Source: Macrostomum lignano (lineage: Eukaryota). Taken from it: a stretch of DNA of 64,000 nucleotides. A program made the position numbers and the translations under genes. This document shows positions 25,267-64,000 of this stretch, piece after piece. Position 1 is the first letter of the stretch. Each line of letters starts with the position of its first letter. The stretch spans positions 95,813 to 159,812 of the forward strand of contig NIVC01002364.1 in NCBI GenBank assembly GCA_002269645.1, read 5' to 3'. The notes under the pieces were generated by a model. It searched no databases, had not been told where the DNA came from, and saw only the letters and a program-made list of their open reading frames with translations.

Positions 25267-25746
25267 TTAGTTTTTGCTTCCAGAAACGGTGTCAGCGCTA
25301 GAATGCGGTGCTGCCGTTCCATCAGACTCGCAACCGACACTGCCGTTCTGTTGATCAGTGCCATCCCGGATTCGCTCATAACAGAGCGGGCACAGCACGC
25401 CACGCTCGTGCCTGTTGCCGCAGCTGGGACAGGACACCACCCTAGCAGTAGCCATCATCGGCACAACAATGTTAGCAAACCGCGTGATTCGCCTGGTAGC
25501 TCGAGTTTCGATTGTTCGCCGTCGTTTCGGCACAGCCAGACGAATTTGCTCGTCTTTGAGATTAATAACTGGCAGCGGATGCTGGGCACAGGGAGAGTCC
25601 GTTACAGCAGCCAGGGCTGGACTAAACGATGGCGGAAAGAATCTGATTGACAGCTGGTTTATTAAACTAGTCAGTGCACATCTGGCGCGAGCTAATCCTG
25701 ATAGGGACATTGCTGGGGCATGCAAGTTTATGCCATTAGGTGACAT
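25267..25746 (-). CDS. MRPL32: Mitochondrial ribosomal protein L32 (bL32m), intronless CDS; start may be the second ATG at 25710
   Basis: AVPKRRRT motif followed by a CPSC...CPLC zinc ribbon, with a targeting-peptide-like N-terminus. Confidence 0.92.
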   Translation of the reverse strand: MSPNGINLHAPAMSLSGLARARCALTSLINQLSIRFFPPSFSPALAAVTDSPCAQHPLPVINLKDEQIRLAVPKRRRTIETRATRRITRFANIVVPMMATARVVSCPSCGNRHERGVLCPLCYERIRDGTDQQNGSVGCESDGTAAPHSSADTVSGSKN

Positions 25747-34900: not shown

Positions 34901-35193
34901 TTAGGCGCGGGCCACTGAGTCCAGGTGTAATCATAGTCAACCCAGCCTGAGTGGCCAATATAAGCGCCCATACCAGCCTTAGGCACATTCACAATAACGT
35001 CGTATTCATTTGGCGACAACGAAGTAATGTAGGGAGTGTGGGTGAACCGAGAGTTCGGCACAGGAGTGAAGTAAGGCGTCATAAATCCCTGCAACACAGC
35101 CTCCCAGTTCCACCAGTACTGAGCCAGTGCCATTTGGAGTGGCATAGCTAATACCAATAGCAACATTGATCCGAGCAACCCAGTCAGTGTCAT
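28905..35193 (-). CDS. Neuroligin-like, non-catalytic type-B carboxylesterase-domain single-pass membrane protein, 709 aa. Exons 35193-34802, 33851-33480, 32297-32040, 31335-31023, 29699-28905
   Basis: Signal peptide; FLGIPYAAPP, EDCLYLN, VLIFIHGG, VTFNYRLGVFGFL, GNYGLWDQ and WVRDNIRYFRGDP esterase motifs. The nucleophile elbow reads GEGSG (no Ser), and there is a TM helix and a C-terminal ESQI. The GT-AG exons total 2130 nt in frame. Confidence 0.92.
29765..30990. repeat. GA-rich intronic low-complexity repeat
   Basis: AGGAGACAGGAGAGGGGAGAG-type units. Confidence 0.93.
31380..31850. repeat. 46-bp (2x23) intronic minisatellite
   Basis: GATTCTTAGAAAGGATCAGAGATGATTCTTTGAAAGAATCAAAGGC. Confidence 0.93.
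32330..33455. repeat. 32-bp intronic minisatellite
   Basis: GAATGGGATTAAGAATCCTGAGACTCGAGTTC. Confidence 0.95.
33885..34705. repeat. 34-bp intronic minisatellite, two subtypes in adjacent blocks
   Basis: Shared core GCTTCTGCCCTCTGC(T/A)GTGTCC. Confidence 0.95.
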
Positions 35194-40388: not shown

Positions 40389-40661
40389 ATGGCCGCCGCA
40401 GCCGCCGATGGAGCAGCAACAGCTGCCACCTGTGTCCGACCGAAGGCCTGGAGCGAACAGGTGGAGGACGCCTACCGATTCCAGTTGGCCGGCTACCGGG
40501 ACGCCCAGGAGTACCGGTCTGTGCGTGGAAGCGATCCAGAACGCTGGAACGGCTCCGGTTTTATTAAAAAGCTCGAACGACGCGACGGGAGTTTCTATTA
40601 TTTTAACAAAGTTCGAGAATGCGCTGACAAAGAAGTTCAACAGTGCAAGCTGTACCACTAA
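40389..40661 (+). CDS. MEIG1: Meiosis-expressed gene 1 protein
   Basis: 90-aa ORF with the family signature ([18 protein letters not shown]...[29 protein letters not shown]). Confidence 0.95.
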
Positions 40662-41965: not shown

Positions 41966-44900
41966 ATGGATGCCCAGACTGTTCGACTGGCGAGTTTCAG
42001 AGCCGAGGAGCTGGAGAACTTTGTCAGACACCCAAAGACTCGGCCTGCGCACCTCTCCAGCCGCACCATGGAGGCGCTCTTAATCGGCCATCCGCTCACT
42101 CGAATGCCTAAGGAGGCTTTCCGGTCTGCCGACGAAGGTGAGAGTTCGGCCTTCTGCTGAACCGGATGTAGCGCTGTTCCCTTGAGTCAATTCCTAGATA
42201 TATTTACCGGAAGTTCAGTCGTTCCCTGAATAAAAATCGGACAACTCTTCTTCTAGGGGAAGAAGACACGAAATTAACAGCCCGCTGTACACTCCTGTGT
42301 GAGTGTGTGCATGTGCGTGTGACTGCGTACGCATCCGCGCGCTTGTGTGCCTGCTCAGGGGAGTCGGCGGAATGGGCAGTAATGCCTCTCGCCGGTTGTG
42401 ACAATGTCGATTAAAGTCCGCCAGGATGCACACCACCCCTGCCTCTAATAAAAAAAATAGCAGTCTCTTCCTGGCTTTTCAAATTAATCAGTTCTTTGAA
42501 CTCAAAATTATGAGCCAATTATTTTTCATCTTAAGATCAATGATTAGTTATTTATGTTGGCAACAGATATGCATTCAAAAAGTTTTGTTTCGTTGACGCA
42601 TTTGCTAATTGAAGTTGCGCGAAAGCAAAATGCTGTCTGCATGCTGACGCCACAGGTAATTACTAGCTGGTCGAGGGGGGCTTAGAAATTTTTTGATAAT
42701 AGCTTTAATTTTCAGATACACCTGCATTGACGAATTAACAGGTGGCACCGAAGCACTGATTTCTCTATTGCATCTGTTAGCTGGAAACGCCACAATGTCA
42801 GGGTAATTTGTCAGTAAATTGGTTTATCCAGGGTGTAACTGTGATGTTTCGCACCGAAAAATATCTATGAATGTTGCAGTAAGGGGGTTTATCATAAGCA
42901 GGGGGCAGTGTGCACCCTGGCGCACTTTAAGGCACAACCGATTCAGGGCCACTGAGCTAGCTGCTAAAAATAGCTACGACCGCCTACGAATATAATTAGG
43001 GAATCCAAATCGTATTGAAATCTTCGAGAGAAGACAGTGGTAAATACCTGGATGCTAAAAATAGTTATCATGGGAATCCCCGTGGTAGTAAATCCGACAA
43101 TTTAGTGAGAACGAATTAGCTGCTAAAAATAGCTATAATTGCAAATTGCCAGGGAATCCTAATCGCATTGAAATCGTCGTAAAGACGGTGGTAAATATCT
43201 TGGGTACTAAAAATAGCTATCATCGGAAATCCCGGTGCTGGTAAATCCGACAATTCAGTGAGAATGAACTAGCTGCTAAAAATAGCTATAATTAGGGAAT
43301 CCCAACCGCATTGAAATCGTCGAGAAGAAAGTGGTAAATACCTGGATGCTAAAAATAGCTATCAGGGGAAATCCCGGTGCTGGTAAATCCGACAATTCAG
43401 TGAGAATGAATTAGCTGCTAAAAATAGCTATAGTTAGGGTATCTCTGTGTGTTCAGATCTCAAACAAGACGATACAAAAGCTGTGGCCATCAAACCGCAC
43501 TCTCACACAGGCAAGTCCGTCAGTGAAACGTTGAGCCTGAGCGAGCTGGGCAGCTCTCTGATGAACCTGTTCAGACGCCTGCTGGTGCCCTACATCCTGG
43601 CCTTCATAACTTGCACCTTTCTGTACCGCCTGTACCTCAAATTCAGTGACGAAGATGCTTTTTCTATGCGGATGCAAGGCCGTCCTAAAGGACGAAAATG
43701 TGAAAAAATTTCCCCCATTTATCCGAATAAAATCATTTGCTACGGGATCCTTGGTTTTACCTGCTTGTTTTTTACTGCGCTCGCCAGCTCGATTCGAAAA
43801 TTAGCTATTCGGTTCACCGACTTTATTGCGCTTCGAACTATCACCATGGCAACGTGTCATATCATGAGCCGGATTAGGCATTTGTATGGTCTGCTGCAAA
43901 CCACGGATCCCAATTGTGAGCCGACGTACTCAAAATTTTGTATTCTTTGAAAATCAACGCCCTCCAGGTGGCGCCATTCTTTATTGGGTCCTTCCGGTGG
44001 CGCCGTTACTTTATTGAATCCTTCAGGTGGCGCCATTCTTTATTGAGTCCTTCAGGTGGCGCTATTCTTTTATTGAATCCTTCAGGTGGCGCCACTCTTT
44101 ATTGAGTCCTTCAGGTGGCGCCATTCTTTATTGAATCCTTCAGGTGGCGCCATTCTTTATTGAGTCCTTCAGGTGGCGCCATTCTTTATTGAGTCCTTCA
44201 GGTGGCGCCATTCTTTATTGAATCCTTCAGGTGGCGCCATTCTTTATTGAATCCTTCAGGTGGCGCCACTCTTTATTGAGTCCTTCAGGTGGCGCCATTC
44301 TTTATTGAATCCTTCAGGTGGCGCCATTCTTTATTGAGTCCTTCAGGTGGCGCCATTCTTTATTGAATCCTTCAGGTGGCGCCATTCTTTATTGAATCCT
44401 TCAGGTGGCGCCATTCTTTATTGAATCCTTCAGGTGGCGCCATTCTTTATTGAAACCTTCGGGTGGCGCCACTCTTTATTGAGCCCTTCAGGTGGCGCCA
44501 TTCTTTATTGAGTCCTTCAGGTGGCGCCATTCTTTATTGAATCCTTCAGGTGGCGCCATTCTTTATTGAATCCTTCAGGTGGCGCCATTCTTTATTGAAT
44601 CCTTCAGGTGGCGCCATTCTTTATTGAATCCTTCAGGTGGCGCCATTTTTTATTGAATCCTTCAGATGGCGCCATTCTTTATTGAGTCCTTCAGGTAGCG
44701 CCATTCTTTATTGAGTCCTTCAGGTGGCGCCATTCTTTATTGAGTCCTTCAGGTGGCGCCACTCTTTATTGAGTCCTTCAGGTGGCGCCATTCTTTATTG
44801 AATCCTTCAGGTGGCGCCATTCTTTATTGAGTCCTTCAGGTGGCGCCATTCTTTTATTGAATCCTTCAGGTGGCGCCACTCTTTATTGAATCCTTCACGT

Positions 44901-47900
44901 GGCGCCACTCTTTATTGAATCCTTCAGGTGGCGCCACTCTTTATTGAATCCTTCAGGTGGCGCCATTCTTTATTGAATCCTTCAGGTGGCGCCATTCTTT
45001 ATTGAATCCTTCAGGTGGCGCCACTCTTTATTGAATCCTTCAGGTGGCGCCACTCTTTATTGAATCCTTCAGGTGGCGCCACTCTTTATTGAATCCTTCA
45101 GGTGGCGCCATTCTTTATTGAATTCTTCAGGTGGCGCCATTCTTTATTGAGTCCTTCAGGTGGCGCCATTCTTTATTGAATCCTTCAGGTGGCGCCATTC
45201 TTTATTGAATCCTTCAGGTGGCGCCATTCTTTATTGAATCCTTCAGGTGGCGCCATTCTTTATTGAATCCTTCAGGTGGCGCCATTCTTTATTGAATCCT
45301 TCAGGTGGCGCCATTCTTTATTGAGTCCTTCAGGTGGCGCCATTCTTTATTGAGTCCTTCAGGTGGCGCCACTCTTTATCGAGTCCTTCAGGTGGCGCCA
45401 TTCTTTATTGAGCCTTCAGGTGGCGCCATTCTTTATTGAATCCTTCAGGTGGCGCCATTCTTTATTGAATCCTTCAGGTGGCGCCATTCTTTATTGAATC
45501 CTTCCGGTGGCGCCGTTACTTTATTGAATCCTTCAGGTGGCGCCATTCTTTATTGAGTCCTTCAGGTGGCGCCATTCTTTTATTGAATCCTTCAGGTTGC
45601 GCCACTCTTTAATGAGTCCTTCAGGTGGCGCCATTCTTTATTGAATCCTTCAGGTGGCGCCATTCTTTATTGAATCCTTCCGGTGGCGCCGTTACTTTAT
45701 TGAATCCTTCAGGTGGCGCCATTCTTTATTGAGTCCTTCAGGTGGCGCCATTCTTTTATTGAATCCTTCAGGTGGCGCCACTCTTTAATGAGTCCTTCAG
45801 GTGGCGCCACTCTTTATTGAGCCCTTCAGGTGGCGCCATTCTTTATTGAGTCCTTCAGGTGGCGCCATTCTTTATTGAGTCCTTCAGGTGGCGCCATTCT
45901 TTATTGAATTCTTCAGGTGGCGCCATTCTTTATTGAGTCCTTCAGGTGGCGCCATTCTTTATTGAATCCTTCAGGTGGCGCCACTCTTTATTGAGCCCTT
46001 CAGGTGGCGCCATTCTTTATTGAATCCTTCAGGTGGCGCCATTCTTTATTGAATCCTTCAGGTGGCGCCATTCTTTATTGAATCCTTCAGGTGGCGCCAT
46101 TCTTTATTGAATCCTTCAGGTGGCGCCATTCTTTATTGAATCCTTCAGGTGGCGCCATTCTTTATTGAGTCCTTCAGGTGGCGCCATTCTTTATTGAGTC
46201 CTTCAGGTGGCGCCACTCTTTATCGAGTCCTTCAGGTGGCGCCATTCTTTATTGAGCCCTTCAGGTGGCGCCATTCTTTATTGAATCCTTCAGGTGGCGC
46301 CATTCTTTATTGAATCCTTCAGGTGGCGCCATTCTTTATTGAATCCTTCCGGTGGCGCCGTTACTTTATTGAATCCTTCAGGTGGCGCCATTCTTTATTG
46401 AGTCCTTCAGGTGGCGCCATTCTTTTATTGAATCCTTCAGGTTGCGCCACTCTTTAATGAGTCCTTCAGGTGGCGCCATTCTTTATTGAATCCTTCAGGT
46501 GGCGCCATTCTTTATTGAATCCTTCCGGTGGCGCCGTTACTTTATTGAATCCTTCAGGTGGCGCCATTCTTTATTGAGTCCTTCAGGTGGCGCCATTCTT
46601 TTATTGAATCCTTCAGGTGGCGCCACTCTTTAATGAGTCCTTCAGGTGGCGCCACTCTTTATTGAGCCCTTCAGGTGGCGCCATTCTTTATTGAGTCCTT
46701 CAGGTGGCGCCATTCTTTATTGAGTCCTTCAGGTGGCGCCATTCTTTATTGAATTCTTCAGGTGGCGCCATTCTTTATTGAGTCCTTCAGGTGGCGCCAT
46801 TCTTTATTGAAACCTTCGGGTGGCGCCACTCTTTATTGAGCCCTTCAGGTGGCGCCATTCTTTATTGAATCCTTCAGGTGGCGCCATTCTTTATTGAATC
46901 CTTCAGATGGCGCCATTCTTTATTGAGTCCTTCAGGTAGCGCCATTCTTTATTGAGTCCTTCAGGTGGCGCCATTCTTTATTGAATCCTTCAGGTGGCGC
47001 CATTCTTTATTGAATCCTTCAGGTGGCGCCATTCTTTATTGAATCCTTCAGGTGGCGCCATTCTTTATTGAATCCTTCAGATGGCGCCATTCTTTATTGA
47101 GTCCTTCAGGTAGCGCCATTCTTTATTGAGTCCTTCAGGTAGCGCCATTCTTTATTGAGTCCTTCAGGTGGCGCCACTCTTTATTGAGTCCTTTAGGTGG
47201 CGCCATAACCTCTTACTGCGCCATTAACGTGACCCTGTTAACTAATATTGTTTTAGTTTAGTAAAGACAATTCTAGTTAATAAATTTGTGATTATTAATT
47301 ACACCAGCCATCAAAGACAGGCCAAAGCCAATAAGCTACCACATCTGCTATCTGTTTGAGTCGTTTCTGCGCAGCCGTCTGCTCATGCTCGTCTGCAACT
47401 GCGTCCCGATCCTGCTCTGCATCATCTGCGTCATGGTGGACACCAGAATGGAACAACTGCTGATTCGATGGCAGCTCCTTATTGGTGAGACAATTAGCCA
47501 ATCTGCCAGTCTGCTTCCAATCTGCCAGTCTGCTTCCAGTCTGCCAGTCTGTTTTCAATCTGCCAGTCTGTTTCCAATTTGCCAGTCTGTTTCCAATCTG
47601 CCAGTCTGCTTCCGATCTGCCAGTCTGTTTCCAATCTGCCAGTCTGTTTTCAATTTGCCAGTCTGTTTCCAATCTGCCAGTCTGTTTCCAATCTGCCAGT
47701 CTGTTTTCAATCTGCCAGTCTGTTTTCAATTTGCCAGTCTGTTTCCAATCTGCCAGTCTGTTTCCAATCTGCCAGCCTGTTTCCAATCTGCCAGTCTGTT
47801 TTCAATTTGCCAGTCTGTTTCCAATCTGCCAGTCTGTTTCCAATCTGCCAGTCTGTTTCCAATTTGCCAGTCTGTTTCCAATCTGCCAGTCTGTTTCCAA

Positions 47901-52212: not shown

Positions 52213-52352
52213 GGCTGTGTGCACCCTGGCGCACTTTAAGCGACATTGTCACACAACCGGCGAGAGGCATCACTGCCCATTCCGCAGACTCCCCTGAGCA
52301 GGCACACAAGCGCGCGGATACGTACGCAGTCATACGCACAGGCACACACACA
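52213..52352 (-). mobile_element. 3' fragment of the same SINE
   Basis: GTGTGCACCCTGGCGCACTTTAAGCGACA...CAAGCGCGCGGATACG is shared with 35766-35880. Shorter traces occur at ~42897-42942 and ~49670-49750. Confidence 0.7.
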
Positions 52353-53230
52353 CAAACGTGCACGAGGCACTTATTGGCCAAGTGTGCAAAAGCTTGCACA
52401 TATTGGGACTGCTCCGACACACGAAAAATCACACACACACACGTCCCCACACAGGCAATTTTCAACCCACCAAATCGATTTTTATTGACAACATGCTTTT
52501 GGCTTACTGAAAACAGTTGGAAAGCATTTTTCGAGGTGCATTGAACTCACAACAGATTGTACATGTATACTTGTCTAAAACAGAATTAAAAAACCCTGGT
52601 GTCTTGCTGAATTCCACTTAAGGCAATAATATCAGCGCGTCAAATTTCACCAGATAATTTCAGCGATCATAGATTATAGAAGACAGGATGGTAAATGGCA
52701 AGGGACTTTAAGGTTATCGAAAACAAACGACATTGACACATATCAAAAAAATTTTACGATCTGAATAAACAAAATTTGCTACATTTAGTGCCACTGGGAA
52801 AAAACAATTCTGTAGCGAAACTCCACTGTTCATAAAAATGTACTTTATTGATTATGACACAATCACTAGAATTACTCAAAAGGTACATGTCAGCTATTCG
52901 GACCCACAGAATGCTATGTAAAAGGATGCGGAAATGAACCACACTATAGCAGAAGCCAGCACACACTATAGTATAGGGCTGTCCCAACAATTCCACCATA
53001 GCCAGTGTGGATGGGGCTGTCCCAACAATTCCACCATAGCCAGTGTGGATGGGGCTGTCCCAACAATTCCAGCATAGCTTGAAAAAGAATATACACAAAT
53101 ACTATAAAAAGCAAATGCTAGAGCTCTACCGCGGTCATTGCACCGGGTTTTATTAGAAACAGACTGCAAAAAAATGCGTCCTCTGAATAATATTCCAGTG
53201 AAGCACACAACAGTTAATCGGCTTCTCGAT

Positions 53231-53451
53231 TCAGAAACTTAAAAAATAACCAGCTCCGCCAGAAAACTCATCAATTAACTGACTGCCGGCACGGATAGCG
53301 GCTGCTGCTGCTGCTGCTGCTGCTGCTGCGGCTTGTGAGCAGCAAGTGAACCAAATGACGGATGCAGCGGCGAGATCAGAATGCTCGCTGCTGATCGTTA
53401 AAGCGCATTCTTGTCTCTTAGGCATGTCGCTGGCGTTGCTGACTTCAGAAG
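53231..53451 (-). CDS. Putative terminal exon of the gene hosting the exon array
   Basis: Same acceptor (tttcttttcctcgcag) as the array units, but a diverged 3' end (SQLIDEFSGGAGYFLSF-stop). An AATAAA lies on the minus strand at 53153-53148. Confidence 0.5.
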
Positions 53452-53938
53452 CTGCGAGGAAAAGAAATCAATTAAGATAGGCTTGCTTTAGTAATCATTA
53501 ATAGGCTATAAAGGAACCCTTTAATAGAACGTGTTCAACTAATGCTGGGTCTGTTTTGAAAAGTCAGAACTCAGAAGTAGTCGCGATTAGAATCAGTATT
53601 GTCCCAATAAGTGCGACCCAACAAATGCTGTTCAAAAAATAGGCCTGGCTGCAATGTCCCAATAAATGCCCAACAAATTACTAGCCTTGAGCTAGGCTGG
53701 GCTGTGTTTACTATTCATTGCGTTTGTAGCTTGTGTCCCAACAATGCCACTGAGATTGTTGCATTGCTTTTGAATTGTGCTCTACCAGGTAACACAAGTA
53801 CTCTGGTGTACAATACTTCTACAGCAGATAATACTCACCCAAAACAGATCGTCTCTTTCTCTTTAATCCTGTGCCAGACGGGTTTTCTTCAGATCCACCA
53901 GAAAATTCACAAATAGACTGACTGCCTGCACGGATAGC

Positions 53939-53971
<33 letters not shown>

Positions 53972-54582
53972 GGCTTGTGAGCAGCAAGGGAACCAAATGA
54001 CGGATGCAGCGGCGAGATCAGAATGCTCGCTGCTGATCGTTAAAGCGCATTCTTGTCTCTTAGGCATGTCGCTGGCGTTGCTGACTTCAGAAGCTGCGAG
54101 GAAAAGAAATCAATTAAGATAGGCTTGCTTTAGTAATCATTAATAGGCTATAAAGGAACCCTTTAATAGAACGTGTTCAACTAATGCTGGGTCTGTTTTG
54201 AAAAGTCAGAACTCAGAAGTAGTCGCGATTAGAATCAGTATTGTCCCAATAAGTGCGACCCAACAAATGCTGTTCAAAAAATAGGCCTGGCTGCAATGTC
54301 CCAATAAATGCCCAACAAATTACTAGCCTTGAGCTAGGCTGGGCTGTGTTTACTATTCTTTGCGTTTGTATAGCTTGTGTCCCAACAATGCCACTGAGAT
54401 TGTTGCATTGCTTTTGAATTGTGCTCTACCAGGTAACACAAGTACTCTGGTGTACAATACTTCTACAGCAGATAATACTCACCCAAAACAGATCGTCTCT
54501 TTCTCTTTAATCCTGTGCCAGACGGGTTATCTTCAGATCCACCAGAAAATTCACAAATAGACTGACTGCCTGCACGGATAGC

Positions 54583-54618
<36 letters not shown>

Positions 54619-55244
54619 GGCTTGTGAGCAGCAAGTGAACCAAATGACGGATGCAGCGGCGAGATCAGAATGCTCGCTGCTGATCGTTAAAGCGCATTCT
54701 TGTCTCTTAGGCATGTCGCTGGCGTTGCTGACTTCAGAAGCTGCGAGGAAAAGAAATCAATTAAGATAGGCTTGCTTTAGTAATCATTAATAGGCTATAA
54801 AGGAACCCTTTAATAGAACGTGTTCAACTAATGCTGGGTCTGTTTTGAAAAGTCAGAACTCAGAAGTAGTCGCGATTAGAATCAGTATTGTCCCAATAAG
54901 TGCGACCCAACAAATGCTGTTCAAAAAATAGGCCTGGCTGCAATGTCCCAATAAATGCCCAACAAATTACTAGCCTTGAGCTAGGCTGGGCTGTGTTTAC
55001 TATTCTTTGCGTTTGTATAGCTTGTGTCCCAACAATGCCACTGAGATTGTTGCATTGCTTTTGAATTGTGCTCTACCAGGTAACACAAGTACTCTGGTGT
55101 ACAATACTTCTACAGCAGATAATACTCACCCAAAACAGATCGTCTCTTTCTCTTTAATCCTGTGCCAGACGGGTTATCTTCAGATCCACCAGAAAATTCA
55201 CAAATAGACTGACTGCCTGCACGGATAGCGGCTGCTGCTGCTGC

Positions 55245-55623
55245 TTTTCTTTCTTTCTTTCTTTTTCGGGTCACGGACATTGTAGCTAGACGTAGCTAAT
55301 AGGACCGGGGCGTAGCCCCATGCAGCCGGGGCGCTGACCCTGCGCGGGCGGGCAGTAGACGGCGGAATCCAATTTGCGGCCTGCGGCGGGTGGCCAGAGA
55401 GCGTGGGGACCCGAGTCCCGGTGCGCAGGGCTCCTCCGCAGACCGACTTACGCTGTAAAAACCGCCATCCACCGCCAACCCAACGTTGGGGGACAGCTCT
55501 CCCAGGCTGCATACCCGGAGGTGAGACCAATTCGTCACCCCGTCGATGGCAGGGACGCACGGAGCTCCTGCCACATTGGCGGGGTGTCCAGGGGCGCGAC
55601 GTGGACGCTGGTCTCGTGCCACC

Positions 55624-55624
<1 letters not shown>
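55245..55624 (-). mobile_element. 380-bp non-autonomous retroposon (SINE/SIDE-like) with a 5' ribozyme and 3' (GAAA)n tail, inserted in a (CAG)n tract
   Basis: Present in only one array unit and absent from the others. It is GC-rich, splits the CTG run, and has the tail GAAAAAGAAAGAAAGAAAGAAAA on the minus strand. The two flanking tracts together are longer than any intact tract, consistent with a target-site duplication. Confidence 0.85.
55523..55624 (-). ncRNA. HDV/CPEB3-like self-cleaving ribozyme (predicted nested double pseudoknot)
   Basis: GGGUGGC-AC-GAGACCA-GCG-UCCACGU-CGC-GCCCCU-GG-A-CACCCCG...CGGGGUG-ACGAAU-UGGUCUC. P2 (7 bp), P3 (3 bp), L3 UCCACGU, P1.1 CC/GG, P4 and the J4/2 C-G-A-A are all in the canonical order. 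P1 needs a bulged U. Confidence 0.85.
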
Positions 55625-55656
<32 letters not shown>

Positions 55657-56265
55657 GGCTTGTGAGCAGCAAGTGAACCAAATGACGGATGCAGCGGCGA
55701 GATCAGAATGCTCGCTGCTGATCGTTAAAGCGCATTCTTGTCTCTTAGGCATGTCGCTGGCGTTGCTGACTTCAGAAGCTGCGAGGAAAAGAAATCAATT
55801 AAGATAGGCTTGCTTTAGTAATCATTAATAGGCTATAAAGGAACCCTTTAATAGAACGTGTTCAACTAATGCTGGGTCTGTTTTGAAAAGTCAGAACTCA
55901 GAAGTAGTCGCGATTAGAATCAGTATTGTCCCAATAAGTGCGACCCAACAAATGCTGTTCAAAAAATAGGCCTGGCTGCAATGTCCCAATAAATGCCCAA
56001 CAAATTACTAGCCTTGAGCTAGGCTGGGCTGTGTTTACTATTCATTGCGTTTGTAGCTTGTGTCCCAACAATGCCACTGAGATTGTTGCATTGCTTTTGA
56101 ATTGTGCTCTACCAGGTAACACAAGTACTCTGGTGTACAATACTTCTACAGCAGATAATACTCACCCAAAACAGATCGTCTCTTTCTCTTTAATCCTGTG
56201 CCAGACGGGTTTTCTTCAGATCCACCAGAAAATTCACAAATAGACTGACTGCCTGCACGGATAGC

Positions 56266-56301
<36 letters not shown>

Positions 56302-56910
56302 GGCTTGTGAGCAGCAAGTGAACCAAATGACGGATGCAGCGGCGAGATCAGAATGCTCGCTGCTGATCGTTAAAGCGCATTCTTGTCTCTTAGGCATGTC
56401 GCTGGCGTTGCTGACTTCAGAAGCTGCGAGGAAAAGAAATCAATTAAGATAGGCTTGCTTTAGTAATCATTAATAGGCTATAAAGGAACCCTTTAATAGA
56501 ACGTGTTCAACTAATGCTGGGTCTGTTTTGAAAAGTCAGAACTCAGAAGTAGTCGCGATTAGAATCAGTATTGTCCCAATAAGTGCGACCCAACAAATGC
56601 TGTTCAAAAAATAGGCCTGGCTGCAATGTCCCAATAAATGCCCAACAAATTACTAGCCTTGAGCTAGGCTGGGCTGTGTTTACTATTCTTTGCGTTTGTA
56701 GCTTGTGTCCCAACAATGCCACTGAGATTGTTGCATTGCTTTTGAATTGTGCTCTACCAGGTAACACAAGTACTCTGGTGTACAATACTTCTACAGCAGA
56801 TAATACTCACCCAAAACAGATCGTCTCTTTCTCTTTAATCCTGTGCCAGACGGGTTTTCTTCAGATCCACCAGAAAATTCACAAATAGACTGACTGCCTG
56901 CACGGATAGC

Positions 56911-56943
<33 letters not shown>

Positions 56944-57551
56944 GGCTTGTGAGCAGCAAGTGAACCAAATGACGGATGCAGCGGCGAGATCAGAATGCTC
57001 GCTGCTGATCGTTAAAGCGCATTCTTGTCTCTTAGGCATGTCGCTGGCGTTGCTGACTTCAGAAGCTGCGAGGAAAAGAAATCAATTAAGATAGGCTTGC
57101 TTTAGTAATCATTAATAGGCTATAAAGGAACCCTTTAATAGAACGTGTTCAACTAATGCTGGGTCTGTTTTGAAAAGTCAGAACTCAGAAGTAGTCGCGA
57201 TTAGAATCAGTATTGTCCCAATAAGTGCGACCCAACAAATGCTGTTCAAAAAATAGGCCTGGCTGCAATGTCCCAATAAATGCCCAACAAATTACTAGCC
57301 TTGAGCTAGGCTGGGCTGTGTTTACTATTCTTGCGTTTGTAGCTTGTGTCCCAACAATGCCACTGAGATTGTTGCATTGCTTTTGAATTGTGCTCTACCA
57401 GGTAACACAAGTACTCTGGTGTACAATACTTCTACAGCAGATAATACTCACCCAAAACAGATCGTCTCTTTCTCTTTAATCCTGTGCCAGACGGGTTTTC
57501 TTCAGATCCACCAGAAAATTCACAAATAGACTGACTGCCTGCACGGATAGC

Positions 57552-57584
<33 letters not shown>

Positions 57585-58193
57585 GGCTTGTGAGCAGCAA
57601 GTGAACCAAATGACGGATGCAGCGGCGAGATCAGAATGCTCGCTGCTGATCGTTAAAGCGCATTCTTGTCTCTTAGGCATGTCGCTGGCGTTGCTGACTT
57701 CAGAAGCTGCGAGGAAAAGAAATCAATTAAGATAGGCTTGCTTTAGTAATCATTAATAGGCTATAAAGGAACCCTTTAATAGAACGTGTTCAACTAATGC
57801 TGGGTCTGTTTTGAAAAGTCAGAACTCAGAAGTAGTCGCGATTAGAATCAGTATTGTCCCAATAAGTGCGACCCAACAAATGCTGTTCAAAAAATAGGCC
57901 TGGCTGCAATGTCCCAATAAATGCCCAACAAATTACTAGCCTTGAGCTAGGCTGGGCTGTGTTTACTATTCATTGCGTTTGTAGCTTGTGTCCCAACAAT
58001 GCCACTGAGATTGTTGCATTGCTTTTGAATTGTGCTCTACCAGGTAACACAAGTACTCTGGTGTACAATACTTCTACAGCAGATAATACTCACCCAAAAC
58101 AGATCGTCTCTTTCTCTTTAATCCTGTGCCAGACGGGTTTTCTTCAGATCCACCAGAAAATTCACAAATAGACTGACTGCCTGCACGGATAGC

Positions 58194-58226
<33 letters not shown>

Positions 58227-58836
58227 GGCTTGTGAGCAGCAAGTGAACCAAATGACGGATGCAGCGGCGAGATCAGAATGCTCGCTGCTGATCGTTAAAG
58301 CGCATTCTTGTCTCTTAGGCATGTCGCTGGCGTTGCTGACTTCAGAAGCTGCGAGGAAAAGAAATCAATTAAGATAGGCTTGCTTTAGTAATCATTAATA
58401 GGCTATAAAGGAACCCTTTAATAGAACGTGTTCAACTAATGCTGGGTCTGTTTTGAAAAGTCAGAACTCAGAAGTAGTCGCGATTAGAATCAGTATTGTC
58501 CCAATAAGTGCGACCCAACAAATGCTGTTCAAAAAATAGGCCTGGCTGCAATGTCCCAATAAATGCCCAACAAATTACTAGCCTTGAGCTAGGCTGGGCT
58601 GTGTTTACTATTCTTTGCGTTTGTATAGCTTGTGTCCCAACAATGCCACTGAGATTGTTGCATTGCTTTTGAATTGTGCTCTACCAGGTAACACAAGTAC
58701 TCTGGTGTACAATACTTCTACAGCAGATAATACTCACCCAAAACAGATCGTCTCTTTCTCTTTAATCCTGTGCCAGACGGGTTTCTTCAGATCCACCAGA
58801 AAATTCACAAATAGACTGACTGCCTGCACGGATAGC

Positions 58837-58872
<36 letters not shown>

Positions 58873-59481
58873 GGCTTGTGAGCAGCAAGTGAACCAAATG
58901 ACGGATGCAGCGGCGAGATCAGAATGCTCGCTGCTGATCGTTAAAGCGCATTCTTGTCTCTTAGGCATGTCGCTGGCGTTGCTGACTTCAGAAGCTGCGA
59001 GGAAAAGAAATCAATTAAGATAGGCTTGCTTTAGTAATCATTAATAGGCTATAAAGGAACCCTTTAATAGAACGTGTTCAACTAATGCTGGGTCTGTTTT
59101 GAAAAGTCAGAACTCAGAAGTAGTCGCGATTAGAATCAGTATTGTCCCAATAAGTGCGACCCAACAAATGCTGTTCAAAAAATAGGCCTGGCTGCAATGT
59201 CCCAATAAATGCCCAACAAATTACTAGCCTTGAGCTAGGCTGGGCTGTGTTTACTATTCATTGCGTTTGTAGCTTGTGTCCCAACAATGCCACTGAGATT
59301 GTTGCATTGCTTTTGAATTGTGCTCTACCAGGTAACACAAGTACTCTGGTGTACAATACTTCTACAGCAGATAATACTCACCCAAAACAGATCGTCTCTT
59401 TCTCTTTAATCCTGTGCCAGACGGGTTTTCTTCAGATCCACCAGAAAATTCACAAATAGACTGACTGCCTGCACGGATAGC

Positions 59482-59517
<36 letters not shown>

Positions 59518-60126
59518 GGCTTGTGAGCAGCAAGTGAACCAAATGACGGATGCAGCGGCGAGATCAGAATGCTCGCTGCTGATCGTTAAAGCGCATTCTT
59601 GTCTCTTAGGCATGTCGCTGGCGTTGCTGACTTCAGAAGCTGCGAGGAAAAGAAATCAATTAAGATAGGCTTGCTTTAGTAATCATTAATAGGCTATAAA
59701 GGAACCCTTTAATAGAACGTGTTCAACTAATGCTGGGTCTGTTTTGAAAAGTCAGAACTCAGAAGTAGTCGCGATTAGAATCAGTATTGTCCCAATAAGT
59801 GCGACCCAACAAATGCTGTTCAAAAAATAGGCCTGGCTGCAATGTCCCAATAAATGCCCAACAAATTACTAGCCTTGAGCTAGGCTGGGCTGTGTTTACT
59901 ATTCATTGCGTTTGTAGCTTGTGTCCCAACAATGCCACTGAGATTGTTGCATTGCTTTTGAATTGTGCTCTACCAGGTAACACAAGTACTCTGGTGTACA
60001 ATACTTCTACAGCAGATAATACTCACCCAAAACAGATCGTCTCTTTCTCTTTAATCCTGTGCCGGACGGGTTTTCTTCAGATCCACCAGAAAATTCACAA
60101 ATAGACTGACTGCCTGCACGGATAGC

Positions 60127-60159
<33 letters not shown>

Positions 60160-60766
60160 GGCTTGTGAGCAGCAAGTGAACCAAATGACGGATGCAGCGG
60201 CGAGATCAGAATGCTCGCTGCTGATCGTTAAAGCGCATTCTTGTCTCTTAGGCATGTCGCTGGCGTTGCTGACTTCAGAAGCTGCGAGGAAAAGAAATCA
60301 ATTAAGATAGGCTTGCTTTAGTAATCATTAATAGGCTATAAAGGAACCCTTTAATAGAACGTGTTCAACTAATGCTGGGTCTGTTTTGAAAAGTCAGAAC
60401 TCAGAAGTAGTCGCGATTAGAATCAGTATTGTCCCAATAAGTGCGACCCAACAAATGCTGTTCAAAAAATAGGCCTGGCTGCAATGTCCCAATAAATGCC
60501 CAACAAATTACTAGCCTTGAGCTAGGCTGGGCTGTGTTTACTATTCATTGCGTTTGTAGCTTGTGTCCCAACAATGCCACTGAGATTGTTGCATTGCTTT
60601 TGAATTGTGCTCTACCAGGTAACACAAGTACTCTGGTGTACAATACTTCTACAGCAGATAATACTCACCCAAAACAGATCGTCTCTTTCTCTTTAATCCT
60701 GTGCCGGACGGGTTTTCTTCAGATCCACCAGAAAATTCACAAATAGACTGACTGCCTGCACGGATA

Positions 60767-60801
<35 letters not shown>

Positions 60802-61409
60802 GGCTTGTGAGCAGCAAGTGAACCAAATGACGGATGCAGCGGCGAGATCAGAATGCTCGCTGCTGATCGTTAAAGCGCATTCTTGTCTCTTAGGCATGTC
60901 GCTGGCGTTGCTGACTTCAGAAGCTGCGAGGAAAAGAAATCAATTAAGATAGGCTTGCTTTAGTAATCATTAATAGGCTATAAAGGAACCCTTTAATAGA
61001 ACGTGTTCAACTAATGCTGGGTCTGTTTTGAAAAGTCAGAACTCAGAAGTAGTCGCGATTAGAATCAGTATTGTCCCAATAAGTGCGACCCAACAAATGC
61101 TGTTCAAAAAATAGGCCTGGCTGCAATGTCCCAATAAATGCCCAACAAATTACTAGCCTTGAGCTAGGCTGGGCTGTGTTTACTATTCATTGCGTTTGTA
61201 GCTTGTGTCCCAACAATGCCACTGAGATTGTTGCATTGCTTTTGAATTGTGCTCTACCAGTAACACAAGTACTCTGGTGTACAATACTTCTACAGCAGAT
61301 AATACTCACCCAAAACAGATCGTCTCTTTCTCTTTAATCCTGTGCCGGACGGGTTTTCTTCAGATCCACCAGAAAATTCACAAATAGACTGACTGCCTGC
61401 ACGGATAGC

Positions 61410-61442
<33 letters not shown>

Positions 61443-63961
61443 GGCTTGTGAGCAGCAAGTGAACAAATGACGGATGCAGCGGCGAGATCAGAATGCTCGC
61501 TGCTGATCGTTAAAGCGCATTCTTGTCTCTTAGGCATGTCGCTGGCGTTGCTGACTTCAGAAGCTGCGAGGAAAAGAAATCAATTAAGATAGGCTTGCTT
61601 TAGTAATCATTAATAGGCTATAAAGGAACCCTTTAATAGAACGTGTTCAACTAATGCTGGGTCTGTTTTGAAAAGTCAGAACTCAGAAGTAGTCGCGATT
61701 AGAATCAGTATTGTCCCAATAAGTGCGACCCAACAAATGCTGTTCAAAAAATAGGCCTGGCTGCAATGTCCCAATAAATGCCCAACAAATTACTAGCCTT
61801 GAGCTAGGCTGGGCTGTGTTTACTATTCATTGCGTTTGTAGCTTGTGTCCCAACAATGCCACTGAGATTGTTGCATTGCTTTTGAATTGTGCTCTACCAG
61901 GTAACACAAGTACTCTGGTGTACAATACTTCTACAGCAGATAATACTCACCCAAAACAGATCGTCTCTTTCTCTTTAATCCTGTGCCGGACGGGTTTTCT
62001 TCAGATCCACCAGAAAATTCACAAATAGACTGACTGCCTGCATGGATAGCGGCTGCTGCTGCTGCGGCTGCTGCTGCGGCTTGTGAGCAGCAAGTGAACC
62101 AAATGACGGATGCAGCGGCGAGATCAGAATGCTCGCTGCTGATCGTTAAAGCGCATTCTTGTCTCTTAGGCATGTCGCTGGCGTTGCTGACTTCAGAAGC
62201 TGCGAGGAAAAGAAATCAATTAAGATAGGCTTGCTTTAGTAATCATTAATAGGCTATAAAGGAACCCTTTAATAGAACGTGTTCAACTAATGCTGGGTCT
62301 GTTTTGAAAAGTCAGAACTCAGAAGTAGTCGCGATTAGAATCAGTATTGTCCCAATAAGTGCGACCCAACAAATGCTGTTCAAAAAATAGGCCTGGCTGC
62401 AATGTCCCAATAAATGCCCAACAAATTACTAGCCTTGAGCTAGGCTGGGCTGTGTTTACTATTCATTGCGTTTGTAGCTTGTGTCCCAACAATGCCACTG
62501 AGATTGTTGCATTGCTTTTGAATTGTGCTCTAAGTAACACAAGTACTCTGGTGTACAATACTTCTACAGCAGATAATACTCACCCAAAACAGATCGTCTC
62601 TTTCTCTTTAATCCTGTGCCGGACGGGTTTTCTTCAGATCCACCAGAAAATTCACAAATAGACTGACTGCCTGCACGGATAGCGGCTGCTGCTGCTGCTG
62701 CTGCTGCTGCTGCGGCTTGTGAGCAGCAAGTGAACCAAATGACGGATGCAGCGGCGAGATCAGAATGCTCGCTGCTGATCGTTAAAGCGCATTCTTGTCT
62801 CTTAGGCATGTCGCTGGCGTTGCTGACTTCAGAAGCTGCGAGGAAAAGAAATCAATTAAGATAGGCTTGCTTTAGTAATCATTAATAGGCTATAAAGGAA
62901 CCCTTTAATAGAACGTGTTCAACTAATGCTGGGTCTGTTTTGAAAAGTCAGAACTCAGAAGTAGTCGCGATTAGAATCAGTATTGTCCCAATAAGTGCGA
63001 CCCAACAAATGCTGTTCAAAAAATAGGCCTGGCTGCAATGTCCCAATAAATGCCCAACAAATTACTAGCCTTGAGCTAGGCTGGGCTGTGTTTACTATTC
63101 TTTGCGTTTGTAGCTTGTGTCCCAACAATGCCACTGAGATTGTTGCATTGCTTTTGAATTGTGCTCTACCAGGTAACACAAGTACTCTGGTGTACAATAC
63201 TTCTACAGCAGATAATACTCACCCAAAACAGATCGTCTCTTTCTCTTTAATCCTGTGCCGGACGGTTTTCTTCAGATCCACCAGAAAATTCACAAATAGA
63301 CTGACTGCCTGCACGGATAGCGGCTGCTGCTGCTGCTGCTGCTGCTGCTGCGGCTTGTGAGCAGCAAGTGAACCAAATGACGGATGCAGCGGCGAGATCA
63401 GAATGCTCGCTGCTGATCGTTAAAGCGCATTCTTGTCTCTTAGGCATGTCGCTGGCGTTGCTGACTTCAGAAGCTGCGAGGAAAAGAAATCAATTAAGAT
63501 AGGCTTGCTTTAGTAATCATTAATAGGCTATAAAGGAACCCTTTAATAGAACGTGTTCAACTAATGCTGGGTCTGTTTTGAAAAGTCAGAACTCAGAAGT
63601 AGTCGCGATTAGAATCAGTATTGTCCCAATAAGTGCGACCCAACAAATGCTGTTCAAAAAATAGGCCTGGCTGCAATGTCCCAATAAATGCCCAACAAAT
63701 TACTAGCCTTGAGCTAGGCTGGGCTGTGTTTACTTTCATTGCGTTTGTAGCTTGTGTCCCAACAATGCCACTGAGATTGTTGCATTGCTTTTGAATTGTG
63801 CTCTACCAGTAACACAAGTACTCTGGTGTACAATACTTCTACAGCAGATAATACTCACCCAAAACAGATCGTCTCTTTCTCTTTAATCCTGTGCCAGACG
63901 GGTTTTCTTCAGATCACCAGAAAATTCACAAATAGACTGACTGCCTGCACGGATAGCGGCA

Positions 63962-63993
<32 letters not shown>

Positions 63994-64000
63994 GGCTTTG

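What the first reader, a model, noticed from the sequence alone, without database searches (positions are those of the whole stretch)
53231..64000. The 642-bp 'satellite' looks like a tandem array of in-frame poly-Ala exons
Seen: on the minus strand each unit has a textbook acceptor (cttaattgatttcttttcctcgcag) and donor (TTGG|gtgagta) bounding a phase 1-1 exon, for example 54093-53839 (255 nt). Only one frame is open: ASEVSNASDMPKRQECALTISSEHSDLAAASVIWFTCCSQ-A(n)-IRAGSQSICEFSGGSEENPSGTGLKRKRRSVLG, ending in an NLS-like KRKRR. The leftmost copy diverges into a stop followed by AATAAA, as a terminal exon would. A common variant (TCT>TCC) is synonymous and another is E>D. Inference: this is either a giant repeat protein with 16 or more poly-Ala/NLS modules or a bank of alternative cassette exons. 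Four copies carry 1-bp deletions (~58783, ~61464, ~63263, ~63914) that may be long-read errors.
Basis: partly seen in the sequence, partly recalled or inferred. Interest (0 to 1): 0.72.

Follow-up and report, generated by a model that had tools for sequence, protein, structure and literature searches.

The report
Spliced exon array in flatworm repeat
The 642-bp tandem repeat is a chain of near-identical exon-plus-intron units from the flatworm Macrostomum lignano that public RNA-based gene models splice together, but it lies inside a multi-copy element with inverted-repeat ends and shows no sign of encoding a conserved protein.

Summary
On the minus strand, 53452-64000 is a 642-bp tandem array, more than 99% identical between copies. 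Each unit is an AG|249-258-nt open, phase 1-1 exon|GTGAGT plus a 387-nt intron. A diverged last copy supplies the stop codon and AATAAA.

The organism is Macrostomum lignano. Public gene models, including the RNA-seq-derived NCBI set, join unit to unit at exactly the predicted junction, so the "exon array" reading is supported.

The "giant poly-Ala/NLS protein" reading is not supported:
- Exon and intron carry the same substitution density.
- One paralogous array has a stop codon in 11 of 15 units.
- Isoforms switch between the poly-Ala and poly-Gln frames.
- No homologue or confident fold exists.
- 4 of the 15 complete exons in this window are broken.

New here: the array is the core of a composite element, 2.46 kb + (642)n + 0.9 kb. 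It has sharp common boundaries and imperfect ~55-bp terminal inverted repeats. It sits at five or more sites, and the three whose outer flanks could be compared share none.

Most likely this is a young, mobile or duplicated, transcribed and spliced repeat. Whether its ORF is translated is unproven.

The parts
53452..64000 (-). Tandem array of 642-bp exon+intron units: 15 complete units plus one cut by the window edge. It continues beyond 64000.
   Evidence: Units are more than 99% identical. (GCA)n length varies in steps of 3.
53839..54093 (-). Example 255-nt phase 1-1 exon. Main acceptor A1 is at 54093 and main donor D3 is after 53839. Alternative acceptor A2 starts at 54029. Alternative donors are D1 after 53923 and D2 after 53880.
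   Evidence: All six donor x acceptor junction peptides occur in public gene models.
53452..53838 (-). Example 387-nt intron. It has stop codons in all frames and four same-orientation copies of the motif (A/T/C)TT(G/A)TTGGG(A/T)C, which resembles the core of the element's terminal repeats.
   Evidence: 76 matches in the window against 16.5 expected; 67 of them lie in the array and its 38-bp flank repeat.
53231..53451 (-). Terminal exon: an older, diverged partial copy of the unit ending ...GGAGYFLSF*, with TGA at 53233-53231.
   Evidence: The same terminal exon ends NCBI model P0002.
53149..53154 (-). AATAAA polyadenylation signal, 77 nt after the stop codon.
   Evidence: Conserved in L001 and L003.
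52976..53078 (.). 38-bp tandem repeat (2.7 copies), each copy carrying ATTGTTGGGAC on the minus strand. It is part of the shared 0.9-kb 3' arm.
   Evidence: Present with variable copy number in L001 and L003.
52358..52410 (-). 3' terminal inverted repeat of the composite element. Similarity to the other loci stops at about 52340-52358.
55236..55625 (-). 390-bp GC-rich retroposon inserted in the (GCA)n run of one exon, in sense orientation, with a (GAAA)n-type A-rich tail. It is absent from all other units and loci.
55523..55624 (-). HDV-like (CPEB3-like) self-cleaving ribozyme fold at the very 5' end of the insertion. The insertion begins at the predicted cleavage-site G1.
   Evidence: RF00094, 26.8 bits, E 0.08, below the gathering score of 50. 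(P1, P1.1, P2, P3 and P4 all pair; the P2 pseudoknot GAGACC/GGUCUC is not part of the Rfam model).

Best explanation
The array is the internal tandem-repeat core of a young, species-restricted composite element of Macrostomum lignano. Its layout is: inverted-repeat end, 2.46-kb arm, (642 bp)n, 0.9-kb arm, inverted-repeat end.

Each 642-bp unit is one symmetric (phase 1-1) exon plus an intron built from motifs resembling the terminal repeats. The 5' arm ends in a 3' splice acceptor that opens a truncated first exon. This acceptor is probably a spliced-leader trans-splice site. The last, diverged copy provides the stop codon and AATAAA.

The element is transcribed on one strand and the units are spliced head to tail, with noisy use of 3 donors and 2 acceptors.

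The array probably arose by unequal crossing-over between two ancestral copies of consensus segment 66-200 lying 642 bp apart. Copy number now drifts, and each locus homogenises its own variants.

The poly-Ala ORF is open because the family is very young and the exon is symmetric, not because selection demonstrably keeps it open. Its translation is possible but unproven.

Shown: anatomy, multi-locus distribution, common boundaries, inverted repeats, junctions in public gene models, and the lack of any constraint signal. Inferred: mobility, trans-splicing, the origin by unequal exchange, and the non-essential status of the ORF.
For: Splice-bounded units. The donor GTGAGT and acceptor CAG match the M. 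lignano cis-splice motifs GT[G/A]AG and CAG (PMC8629364).

All hits are M. lignano. The predicted junction peptides for all six donor x acceptor pairs are found in public models. The NCBI models are RNA-seq derived. No public model matches the 101-aa antisense ORF or the 80-aa intronic ORF.

The four Mlig_3_7 arrays all begin at consensus position ~66-68, after the acceptor cacgcacag|GTTCATCC. Both arrays whose distal end is assembled (L001, L003) and the window's array end at consensus position ~200, in the same terminal exon. Copy numbers are 7.5, 10.5, at least 4.5, at least 16.5 and at least 16.8.

The 5' boundary is identical in L001, L003 and L004. The 3' boundary is identical in L001, L003 and the window. 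Sequence beyond the boundaries is unrelated.

The ends form an imperfect inverted repeat: score 39 against 16.1 +/- 3.2 in shuffles, 0 of 3000 reaching it, and 17 in direct orientation. Possible 9-bp (L001) and 8-bp (L003) flanking direct repeats exist.

Locus-specific variants fill whole arrays: A>D and N>H in L003, W>stop in L002.

Three models start exactly at the first base after the first acceptor. The 35-nt SL ends in ATG.
Against: No reads were examined directly. Short-read transcript assembly in a 99%-identical array can invent or misplace junctions. The method behind the UniProt/WormBase models was not verified.

The inverted repeats are imperfect (about 75% identity). Target-site duplications are ambiguous because the flanks are TG-rich and GTTT abuts both ends in every copy. 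No transposase or empty site was seen, so segmental duplication is not excluded.

The first acceptor (GCACAG) does not match the enriched trans-splice motif [T/C]TNCAG.

The constraint tests rest on only 4 exonic and 3 intronic fixed differences, so power is low.

Some features favour coding. L003 has 8/9 and L001 5/6 intact units. The first genomic ATG of the spliced RNA is in the poly-Ala frame. A diverged unit, P0033 (about 48% identical), keeps the same frame and junction.
Confidence: 0.6

Rival explanations
1. A genuine protein-coding gene family. The spliced array is translated from the first genomic AUG (MPKRQEC...) into a modular protein of n x 85 residues. Each module has a hydrophobic Ala-rich segment, four Cys and a KRKRR motif (NLS or furin-type cleavage site). 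Protein length would be set by repeat copy number.
For: The exon is open and symmetric, and the terminal exon is in frame with a stop codon and AATAAA. The first ATG of the spliced RNA is in this frame and there is no ATG in the first exon. Most units are intact in L001 and L003, and 11/15 in the window. The window's 1-bp deletions lie in short runs and could be sequencing errors. Diverged unit P0033 keeps the frame and the junction. UniProt labels some models 'Secreted protein'.
Against: L002 carries an in-frame TAG in 11/15 units. Substitution density is 2.4% in the exon and 2.3% in the intron. Three of four fixed exonic differences change the protein, one to a stop. Many isoforms shift into the poly-Gln frame and terminate. 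If the SL is added, its AUG opens a 55-aa poly-Gln-frame ORF instead. There is no homologue outside M. lignano among 1.8 billion representatives, no real Pfam domain, and AF2 mean pLDDT is 38. A retroposon breaks one unit.
Confidence: 0.25
2. A bank of mutually exclusive or alternative cassette exons that diversifies one protein.
For: There are many tandem symmetric exons, and alternative donors and acceptors are in use.
Against: Units are more than 99% identical, so choosing among them yields almost no diversity. Public models contain several units in series rather than one per transcript. No constant upstream coding exons exist in the 2.46-kb arm.
Confidence: 0.03
3. An inert satellite. The gene models would be artefacts of ORF-calling and short-read assembly on a repeat, with only background read-through transcription.
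For: The window is 57% tandem repeats. The models are short, partial and inconsistent in frame. Several carry implausible names such as Dymeclin or UCH domain.
Against: Two independent annotations use exactly the GT-AG sites predicted from the DNA, for six site combinations. Only the sense exon parts appear in models, never the equally long antisense or intronic ORFs. The NCBI pipeline required RNA-seq support. The arrays are not anonymous: all have the same acceptor-bearing start and, where the end is assembled, the same polyA-bearing end.
Confidence: 0.07
4. The transcribed array is the same, but the copies spread by segmental duplication or ectopic conversion between TG-rich tracts rather than by transposition.
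For: Both boundaries lie in TG-rich sequence. GTTT abuts both ends in every copy. No transposase was seen. The M. lignano assembly is known to be highly duplicated (PMC5730564).
Against: Three copies share each boundary to the base, with unrelated flanks. The ends are significantly inverted-complementary. Flank-specific 8-9-bp direct repeats are present. The end motif is reiterated internally, as in subterminal transposase-binding repeats.
Confidence: 0.2

Closest known systems
DNA transposons and foldback elements that carry expandable internal tandem repeats (Tetris of Drosophila virilis, PMC4079207; Helentron-borne satellite-like arrays in the Pacific oyster, PMC7492417)
   Same: Inverted-repeat ends. 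An internal tandem array whose copy number differs between insertions. Repeat units that share motifs with the element's ends. Dispersal of short arrays to many euchromatic sites.
   Different: Here the unit is 642 bp and is a complete exon+intron module with working splice sites, an open symmetric frame, its own entry acceptor and a terminal stop plus polyA signal. I did not find spliced unit-to-unit transcripts in the abstracts of those papers; I did not read their full texts. The superfamily, the target-site duplication and an autonomous partner are all unresolved here.
Tandem exon duplication that builds modular repeat proteins from phase 1-1 exons (general principle of exon shuffling; from my own knowledge, not tested here)
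   Same: Symmetric phase 1-1 exon with its flanking intron duplicated in tandem, so any copy number stays in frame.
   Different: Known cases show diverged, selectively maintained modules with recognisable folds. These units are more than 99% identical, show no constraint signal, have no fold or homologue, and one paralogous array is full of stop codons.
Macrosatellites with an ORF in every unit and a flanking polyA signal that serves only the last unit (human D4Z4/DUX4; from my own knowledge)
   Same: One ORF per repeat unit. A unique distal flank supplies the polyadenylation signal. Copy number is polymorphic.
   Different: D4Z4 units are 3.3 kb, each a self-contained ORF, and they are not spliced to one another. 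Here units are joined by splicing into one reading frame.
HDV-like ribozymes at the 5' end of non-LTR retrotransposons (R2, L1Tc/NARTc; PMC3774820, PMC3185411, PMC4035085). This applies only to the 390-bp insertion.
   Same: A nested double-pseudoknot fold at the extreme 5' end. The inserted copy starts at the cleavage-site G. An A-rich 3' tail. Short and non-coding, like NARTc.
   Different: It scores below the Rfam gathering threshold and has a bulged U in P1. The partner LINE is unknown and cleavage is untested. It sits in sense orientation inside a spliced exon, so if active it would cut the host transcript.

Membership tests
Tandemly duplicated coding exons of a modular repeat protein | Each unit is bounded by an AG acceptor and a GT donor with the same intron phase on both sides | tested here: met
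   16 acceptors and 16 donors. Eleven of 15 complete exons are 249-258 nt and phase 1-1.
Tandemly duplicated coding exons of a modular repeat protein | Units are joined to each other in mature RNA | tested here: met
   This is indirect. Junction peptides for D1/D2/D3 x A1/A2 occur in public models. The NCBI models are RNA-seq based. No reads were inspected.
Tandemly duplicated coding exons of a modular repeat protein | The reading frame is maintained by purifying selection | tested here: not met
   Exon 2.4% against intron 2.3% variable sites. Fixed differences are 4/211 exon (3 protein-changing, 1 a stop) against 3/387 intron. L002 has TAG in 11/15 units. Power is low because the copies differ by less than 1%.
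Tandemly duplicated coding exons of a modular repeat protein | The protein product is detected or has homologues or a fold | tested here: not met
   No homologue outside M. lignano. Only sub-threshold Pfam noise. AF2 mean pLDDT 38. Proteomics cannot be tested with these tools.
Classical non-coding satellite DNA | Long head-to-tail arrays of a homogenised monomer | tested here: met
   At least 16.8 copies at more than 99% identity. Locus-specific homogenisation.
Classical non-coding satellite DNA | No gene-like processing signals or mature transcripts | tested here: not met
   Splice sites, terminal stop and AATAAA are present, and public spliced models exist.
Non-autonomous DNA transposon with terminal inverted repeats and internal tandem repeats | Terminal inverted repeats at both ends | tested here: met
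   Imperfect ~55-bp inverted repeat starting 4 nt inside both boundaries. Score 39 against 16.1 +/- 3.2; 0 of 3000 shuffles reach it.
Non-autonomous DNA transposon with terminal inverted repeats and internal tandem repeats | Several copies with identical ends in unrelated flanking DNA | tested here: met
   5' end shared by L001, L003 and L004. 3' end shared by L001, L003 and the window. Flanks do not align.
Non-autonomous DNA transposon with terminal inverted repeats and internal tandem repeats | Target-site duplication of fixed length | tested here: inconclusive
   L001 has 9-bp GTGTGCATG (18/5000 shuffles). L003 has 8-bp GTATGTGT (93/5000). The offsets differ, the flanks are TG-rich, and GTTT abuts both ends in every copy.
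Non-autonomous DNA transposon with terminal inverted repeats and internal tandem repeats | An autonomous partner encoding a transposase, or an empty site | not testable with these tools
   No M. lignano genome can be searched here. No ORF longer than 143 aa lies in the arms of L001.
SL trans-spliced gene of M. lignano | 5'-most acceptor without an upstream cis donor, with the SL on the mature RNA | tested here: inconclusive
   Three models begin at the first base after the acceptor. The SL ends in ATG, in the poly-Gln frame. The acceptor lacks the [T/C]TNCAG motif. SL-containing reads were not available.
HDV-like self-cleaving ribozyme (insertion at 55523-55624) | Nested double pseudoknot with P1, P1.1, P2, P3, P4 and a C in J4/2 | tested here: met
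   All helices pair: P1 has 6 bp including G1-U35 with U4 bulged, P1.1 2 bp, P2 6 bp, P3 3 bp, P4 7 bp. J4/2 is ACGAAUU.
HDV-like self-cleaving ribozyme (insertion at 55523-55624) | Reaches the Rfam gathering score | tested here: not met
   RF00094 26.8 bits against 50, E 0.08. RF00622 14.4 bits against 35. No hit in the gathering-threshold scan.
HDV-like self-cleaving ribozyme (insertion at 55523-55624) | Self-cleavage 5' of G1 | not testable with these tools
   The only supporting fact is that the inserted copy starts exactly at G1.

The most novel reading that the evidence does not exclude
A mobile element carries its own trans-spliced, polyadenylated gene made of a self-expanding chain of symmetric exons. 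Unequal crossing-over would then directly tune the length of a translated modular (possibly secreted and furin-processed) protein, independently at each insertion site. This would be a transposon-borne 'accordion gene' caught at birth.
Probability: 0.12. Interest if true: 0.75.

Novelty: new variant of a known kind. Interest (0 to 1): 0.45.

Why it matters
If the picture holds, three usually separate things coincide at one locus: satellite-like amplification, transposon-like dispersal, and exon-intron structure with real splicing.

It gives a concrete, very young example of how a tandem repeat can enter the transcriptome as dozens of in-frame exons. That is raw material for new repeat proteins, or a source of misleading gene models. 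M. lignano annotations already hold 31 'proteins' from it, some with misleading names.

It is also a practical warning for annotation of repeat-rich flatworm genomes. Since M. lignano has transgenesis (PMC5730564), copy-number-dependent splicing or translation could be studied there.

The ribozyme-headed retroposon sitting in sense orientation inside one exon is a natural test of what a self-cleaving RNA does to a host transcript.

Tried and rejected
- Rfam at gathering thresholds over the whole window found nothing. tRNA scan found nothing.
- Pfam on multi-unit models gave only summed sub-threshold noise, for example Bd3614_N with no single stretch passing.
- Exhaustive HMMER against 1.8 billion representatives found no relative outside M. 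lignano. The weak hits P0032, P0034 and P0035 are unrelated repeat proteins.
- AlphaFold2 on P0002 was run without an alignment and gave mean pLDDT 38, so no fold search was attempted.
- UniProt-only models could not be located on contigs. The DNA of the diverged unit P0033 is in none of the fetched loci.
- I considered that the four Mlig_3_7 loci and the window were homeologous copies of one locus. I rejected this because sequence beyond the common boundaries does not align even with sensitive settings.
- I considered that the array lies in an intron of the antisense TIR-domain gene seen in L003. That gene's first exon is absent from the window and from L001, so it is specific to that one insertion.
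- I considered an SL RNA gene array and rejected it. The SL is 35 nt and its gene 109 bp, and the units have acceptors.
- A literature search for the four gene identifiers found nothing. The paper I expected to describe the UniProt/WormBase gene set was not held under the PMC id I tried, so the method behind those models is unverified.

Full report
**1. What is in the sequence**

Read on the minus strand, 53452-64000 is a head-to-tail array with a 642-bp period. The 12-mer acceptor TTTTCCTCGCAG and the donor G|GTGAGTA each occur 16 times at regular spacing. TRF with a long maximum period reports 13.0 copies of 642 bp (55625-63990) and 3.1 copies of 647 bp (53251-55245).

Fifteen exons have both splice sites inside the window. 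Eleven of them are 249-258 nt, divisible by 3, and open in one frame only. That frame reads SEVSNASDMPKRQECALTISSEHSDLAAASVIWFTCCSQ(A)nIRAGSQSICEFSGGSEENPSGTGLKRKRRSVL. A split GCT codon sits at each junction, so the exons are phase 1-1. The 387-nt remainder of the unit has 5-9 stop codons in every frame.

The last copy (53451-53231) diverges after IRAGSQ to LIDEFSGGAGYFLSF*. AATAAA follows the stop codon by 77 nt.

The deletions lie in short runs.

An open frame of this length appears in 6.8% of shuffles. The sixteen copies are replicas of one event, so the ORF alone is weak evidence.

**2. Organism and independent evidence for splicing**

A two-unit peptide retrieved 30 proteins, all from Macrostomum lignano. 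An exhaustive search of 1.84 billion representatives found nothing significant outside that species.

Four of the proteins are NCBI BOX15_Mlig models from assembly GCA_002269645.1. The annotation of that assembly was built solely from RNA-seq (StringTie/TACO), a de novo transcriptome and TransDecoder (PMC5730564). These models join units as ...KRKRRSVL-A-SEVSNASD..., which is exactly the junction predicted from the DNA. P0002 runs through three units into the terminal exon ...GRAGYFLSF.

The UniProt/WormBase models also reveal one alternative acceptor and two alternative donors:
- A2: cagcag|CG at unit position 65.
- D1: GCA|GTCAGT after position 171.
- D2: CCC|GTCTGG after position 214.

I spliced all six donor x acceptor pairs in silico, for both allelic unit types. 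Every predicted junction peptide occurs in the public proteins.

As a control, the 101-aa antisense ORF and the 80-aa intronic ORF present in every unit match no public protein. The donor and acceptor fit the species' cis-splice motifs (PMC8629364).

I therefore accept that the array is transcribed on one strand and spliced unit to unit. Two caveats apply. I saw gene models, not reads. I could not verify how the UniProt set was made.

**3. Anatomy of the whole locus**

I fetched four loci from the public assembly:
- L001, about 7.5 units.
- L002, at least 16.5 units, running to the contig end.
- L003, about 10.5 units.
- L004, at least 4.5 units, then interrupted by an insertion that begins TG....

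Every array starts at consensus position ~66-68, directly after a unique acceptor: ttttcttttgtgcgcccacgcacag|GTTCATCCGCATTC. Both arrays whose end is assembled (L001, L003), and the window's array, finish at about position 200, in the same terminal exon and 3' region.

An array that begins and ends in the same 66-200 segment is what unequal exchange would produce between two ancestral copies of that segment lying 642 bp apart. This is inference.

Three public models (P0026, P0027, P0029) begin with V encoded by the very first base after the entry acceptor. M. lignano adds a 35-nt spliced leader that ends in ATG. This suggests, but does not prove, a trans-splice site.

If the SL is added, its AUG opens the poly-Gln frame. 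With the main donor, that gives a 55-aa product. The first exon has no ATG of its own. The first genomic ATG of the spliced RNA is MPKRQEC in the second exon, in the poly-Ala frame.

**4. The array is the core of a multi-copy, inverted-repeat-bounded element**

Similarity between loci is 96-99% across three parts: a 2.46-kb 5' arm, the array, and a 0.9-kb 3' arm. It then stops abruptly.
- The 5' limit is the same base in L001, L003 and L004: gttt|GTGCATTAGGCATTTCTTGGGAC.
- The 3' limit is the same base in L001, L003 and the window: ...CCTCGTGCAC|gttt, at window 52358.

Sequence beyond these limits does not align, even with sensitive settings.

The two ends are imperfect inverted repeats of about 55 bp. 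They score 39 against 16.1 +/- 3.2 in shuffles, with 0 of 3000 shuffles reaching 39. The direct-orientation control scores 17.

Flank-specific direct repeats could be target-site duplications: 9 bp in L001 and 8 bp in L003. The TG-rich context and unequal offsets leave this open.

A motif close to the core of the end repeat, (A/T/C)TT(G/A)TTGGG(A/T)C, occurs four times per intron and once in each copy of the 38-bp repeat of the 3' arm, always in one orientation. Counts are 76 against 16.5 expected, and 67 of the 76 lie in the array or that 38-bp repeat.

No long ORF lies in the arms of L001.

The simplest reading is a non-autonomous DNA transposon with an expandable internal array. Segmental duplication between TG tracts is the alternative.

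The repeat is at several sites, at least five, but as a structured, transcribed element rather than an anonymous satellite.

**5. Is the ORF under selection?**

I aligned 44 complete units from the window and three loci.
- Variable sites seen in at least two units are 5/211 in the exon (excluding the GCA run) and 9/387 in the intron, that is 2.4% against 2.3%.
- Fixed differences between locus consensus sequences are 4 exonic (A>D, N>H, W>stop, one synonymous) and 3 intronic.
- In L002 the TGG>TAG change has spread to 11 of 15 units.
- L004 has 3 of 4 units broken, and the window 4 of 15.
- Many public isoforms leave the poly-Ala frame for the poly-Gln frame and terminate.
- Pfam gives only noise. 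A single-sequence AlphaFold2 model has mean pLDDT 38.

Some evidence points the other way:
- L003 (8/9) and L001 (5/6) are largely intact.
- The (GCA)n run changes only in triplets, as slippage would give anyway.
- UniProt A0A1I8FV09 (P0033) shows a unit only about 48% identical, without poly-Ala, still open and spliced in frame to a canonical unit. Its DNA was not retrievable, so I could not tell constraint from ascertainment.

Overall there is no positive evidence of constraint. Because the copies differ by less than 1%, the tests have little power.

**6. The insertion**

The 390-bp insert is GC-rich, ends in gaaaaagaaagaaagaaagaaaag, and is unique to this unit.

Its first 102 nt match the Rfam HDV-ribozyme model end to end. 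The score is 26.8 bits with E 0.08, below the gathering score. The CPEB3 ribozyme model matches more weakly.

Checked by hand, all helices of the double pseudoknot pair:
- P1 G1-C7/G30-U35, with a G-U closing pair and one bulge.
- P1.1 C21C22/G36G37.
- P3 3 bp.
- P4 7 bp.
- P2 pseudoknot GAGACC/GGUCUC, which the covariance model cannot score.
- J4/2 is ACGAAUU.

The inserted DNA begins at G1. That is expected if the RNA 5' end was made by self-cleavage, as described for R2 and L1Tc/NARTc retrotransposons.

The insert is in sense orientation. If active, it would cut this array's transcript between the 13th and 14th visible exons. This is inference.

**7. Verdict**

The exon-array idea is supported by independent gene models. 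The giant poly-Ala/NLS protein and the cassette-bank ideas are not supported.

The best explanation, at confidence about 0.6, is a young, species-restricted, probably mobile composite element. Its internal satellite is made of splice-competent symmetric exons, it gives noisy multi-unit spliced RNAs, and translation is unproven.

The nearest known relatives are transposons that carry expandable tandem repeats, such as Tetris and Helentron-borne arrays. The exon-intron nature and unit-to-unit splicing are the differences. The locus is already annotated as 'hypothetical protein', so the novelty lies in the interpretation, not in the sequence. Interest is moderate.

**8. Rest of the window**

57% of the window is tandem repeat. 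Between the repeats lie three genes:
- A carboxylesterase/neuroligin-like gene on the minus strand (28905-35193), whose introns are filled with minisatellites.
- A mitochondrial bL32-like ORF (25267-25746, minus strand).
- A single-exon MEIG1 homologue (40389-40661, plus strand).

Noticed in passing
window 55236-55625 (minus strand); ribozyme 55523-55624: A 390-bp retroposon with an A-rich (GAAA)n tail whose first 102 nt fold as an HDV-like/CPEB3-like double-pseudoknot ribozyme. The insertion starts at the predicted cleavage-site G. It is unique to this unit and lies in sense orientation to the array.
   Followed up: partly
window 52358-52410, and L001 4443-4497 / 12395-12447: Imperfect ~55-bp inverted repeats mark the common ends of a 2.46 kb + array + 0.9 kb element. 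The element is found at five or more sites, and the three whose outer flanks could be compared share none. Possible 8-9-bp target-site duplications.
   Followed up: partly
window 40389-40661 (+): An intron-less 90-aa ORF that matches Pfam Meiosis_expr (MEIG1) end to end (E 1e-33).
   Followed up: partly
window 28905-35193 (-): Carboxylesterase/neuroligin-like gene. It has a signal-peptide exon at 34759-35193, COesterase exons at 33476-34078 and 28905-29699, and a C-terminal membrane helix. Its introns are almost wholly minisatellites with 21-, 32-, 34- and 46-bp periods.
   Followed up: partly
window 25267-25746 (-): A 159-aa ORF with a Ribosomal_L32p match (CxxC...CxxC), probably mitochondrial bL32. 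It is squeezed between a 52-bp x 47 array and an 18-bp x 94 array.
   Followed up: partly
window 1-53200: Extreme minisatellite load. 50% of this stretch (57% of the whole window) is tandem repeat, in dozens of unrelated families with periods of 4-183 bp, for example 29 bp x 112 at 43961-47206.
   Followed up: no
protein P0033 (UniProt A0A1I8FV09); DNA not found in any fetched locus: A diverged unit (about 48% identical, lacking poly-Ala) that is still open and spliced in frame to a canonical unit. It hints at an older family member or at constraint.
   Followed up: partly
proteins P0015, P0024-P0030: Short models made only of repeat units carry UniProt names such as Dymeclin, UCH domain-, BAF250_C domain-, Rho-GAP domain- and DRIM domain-containing protein. 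This is either mis-naming or a trace of chimeric transcripts with host genes.
   Followed up: no
L001 15493-15702: An interstitial telomere-like (TAGGGT)35 tract, a rotation of TTAGGG, about 3 kb beyond the element's 3' end in locus L001.
   Followed up: no
L004 11385 onward: In this copy the array is cut within an intron by an insertion beginning TGAAGTG... (possibly an LTR element), and the contig ends 3.5 kb later.
   Followed up: no
L003 1-20371 (locus minus strand): Here the whole element lies antisense inside the first intron of a 981-aa TIR_2-domain gene model. That gene is absent from the window and from L001.
   Followed up: partly
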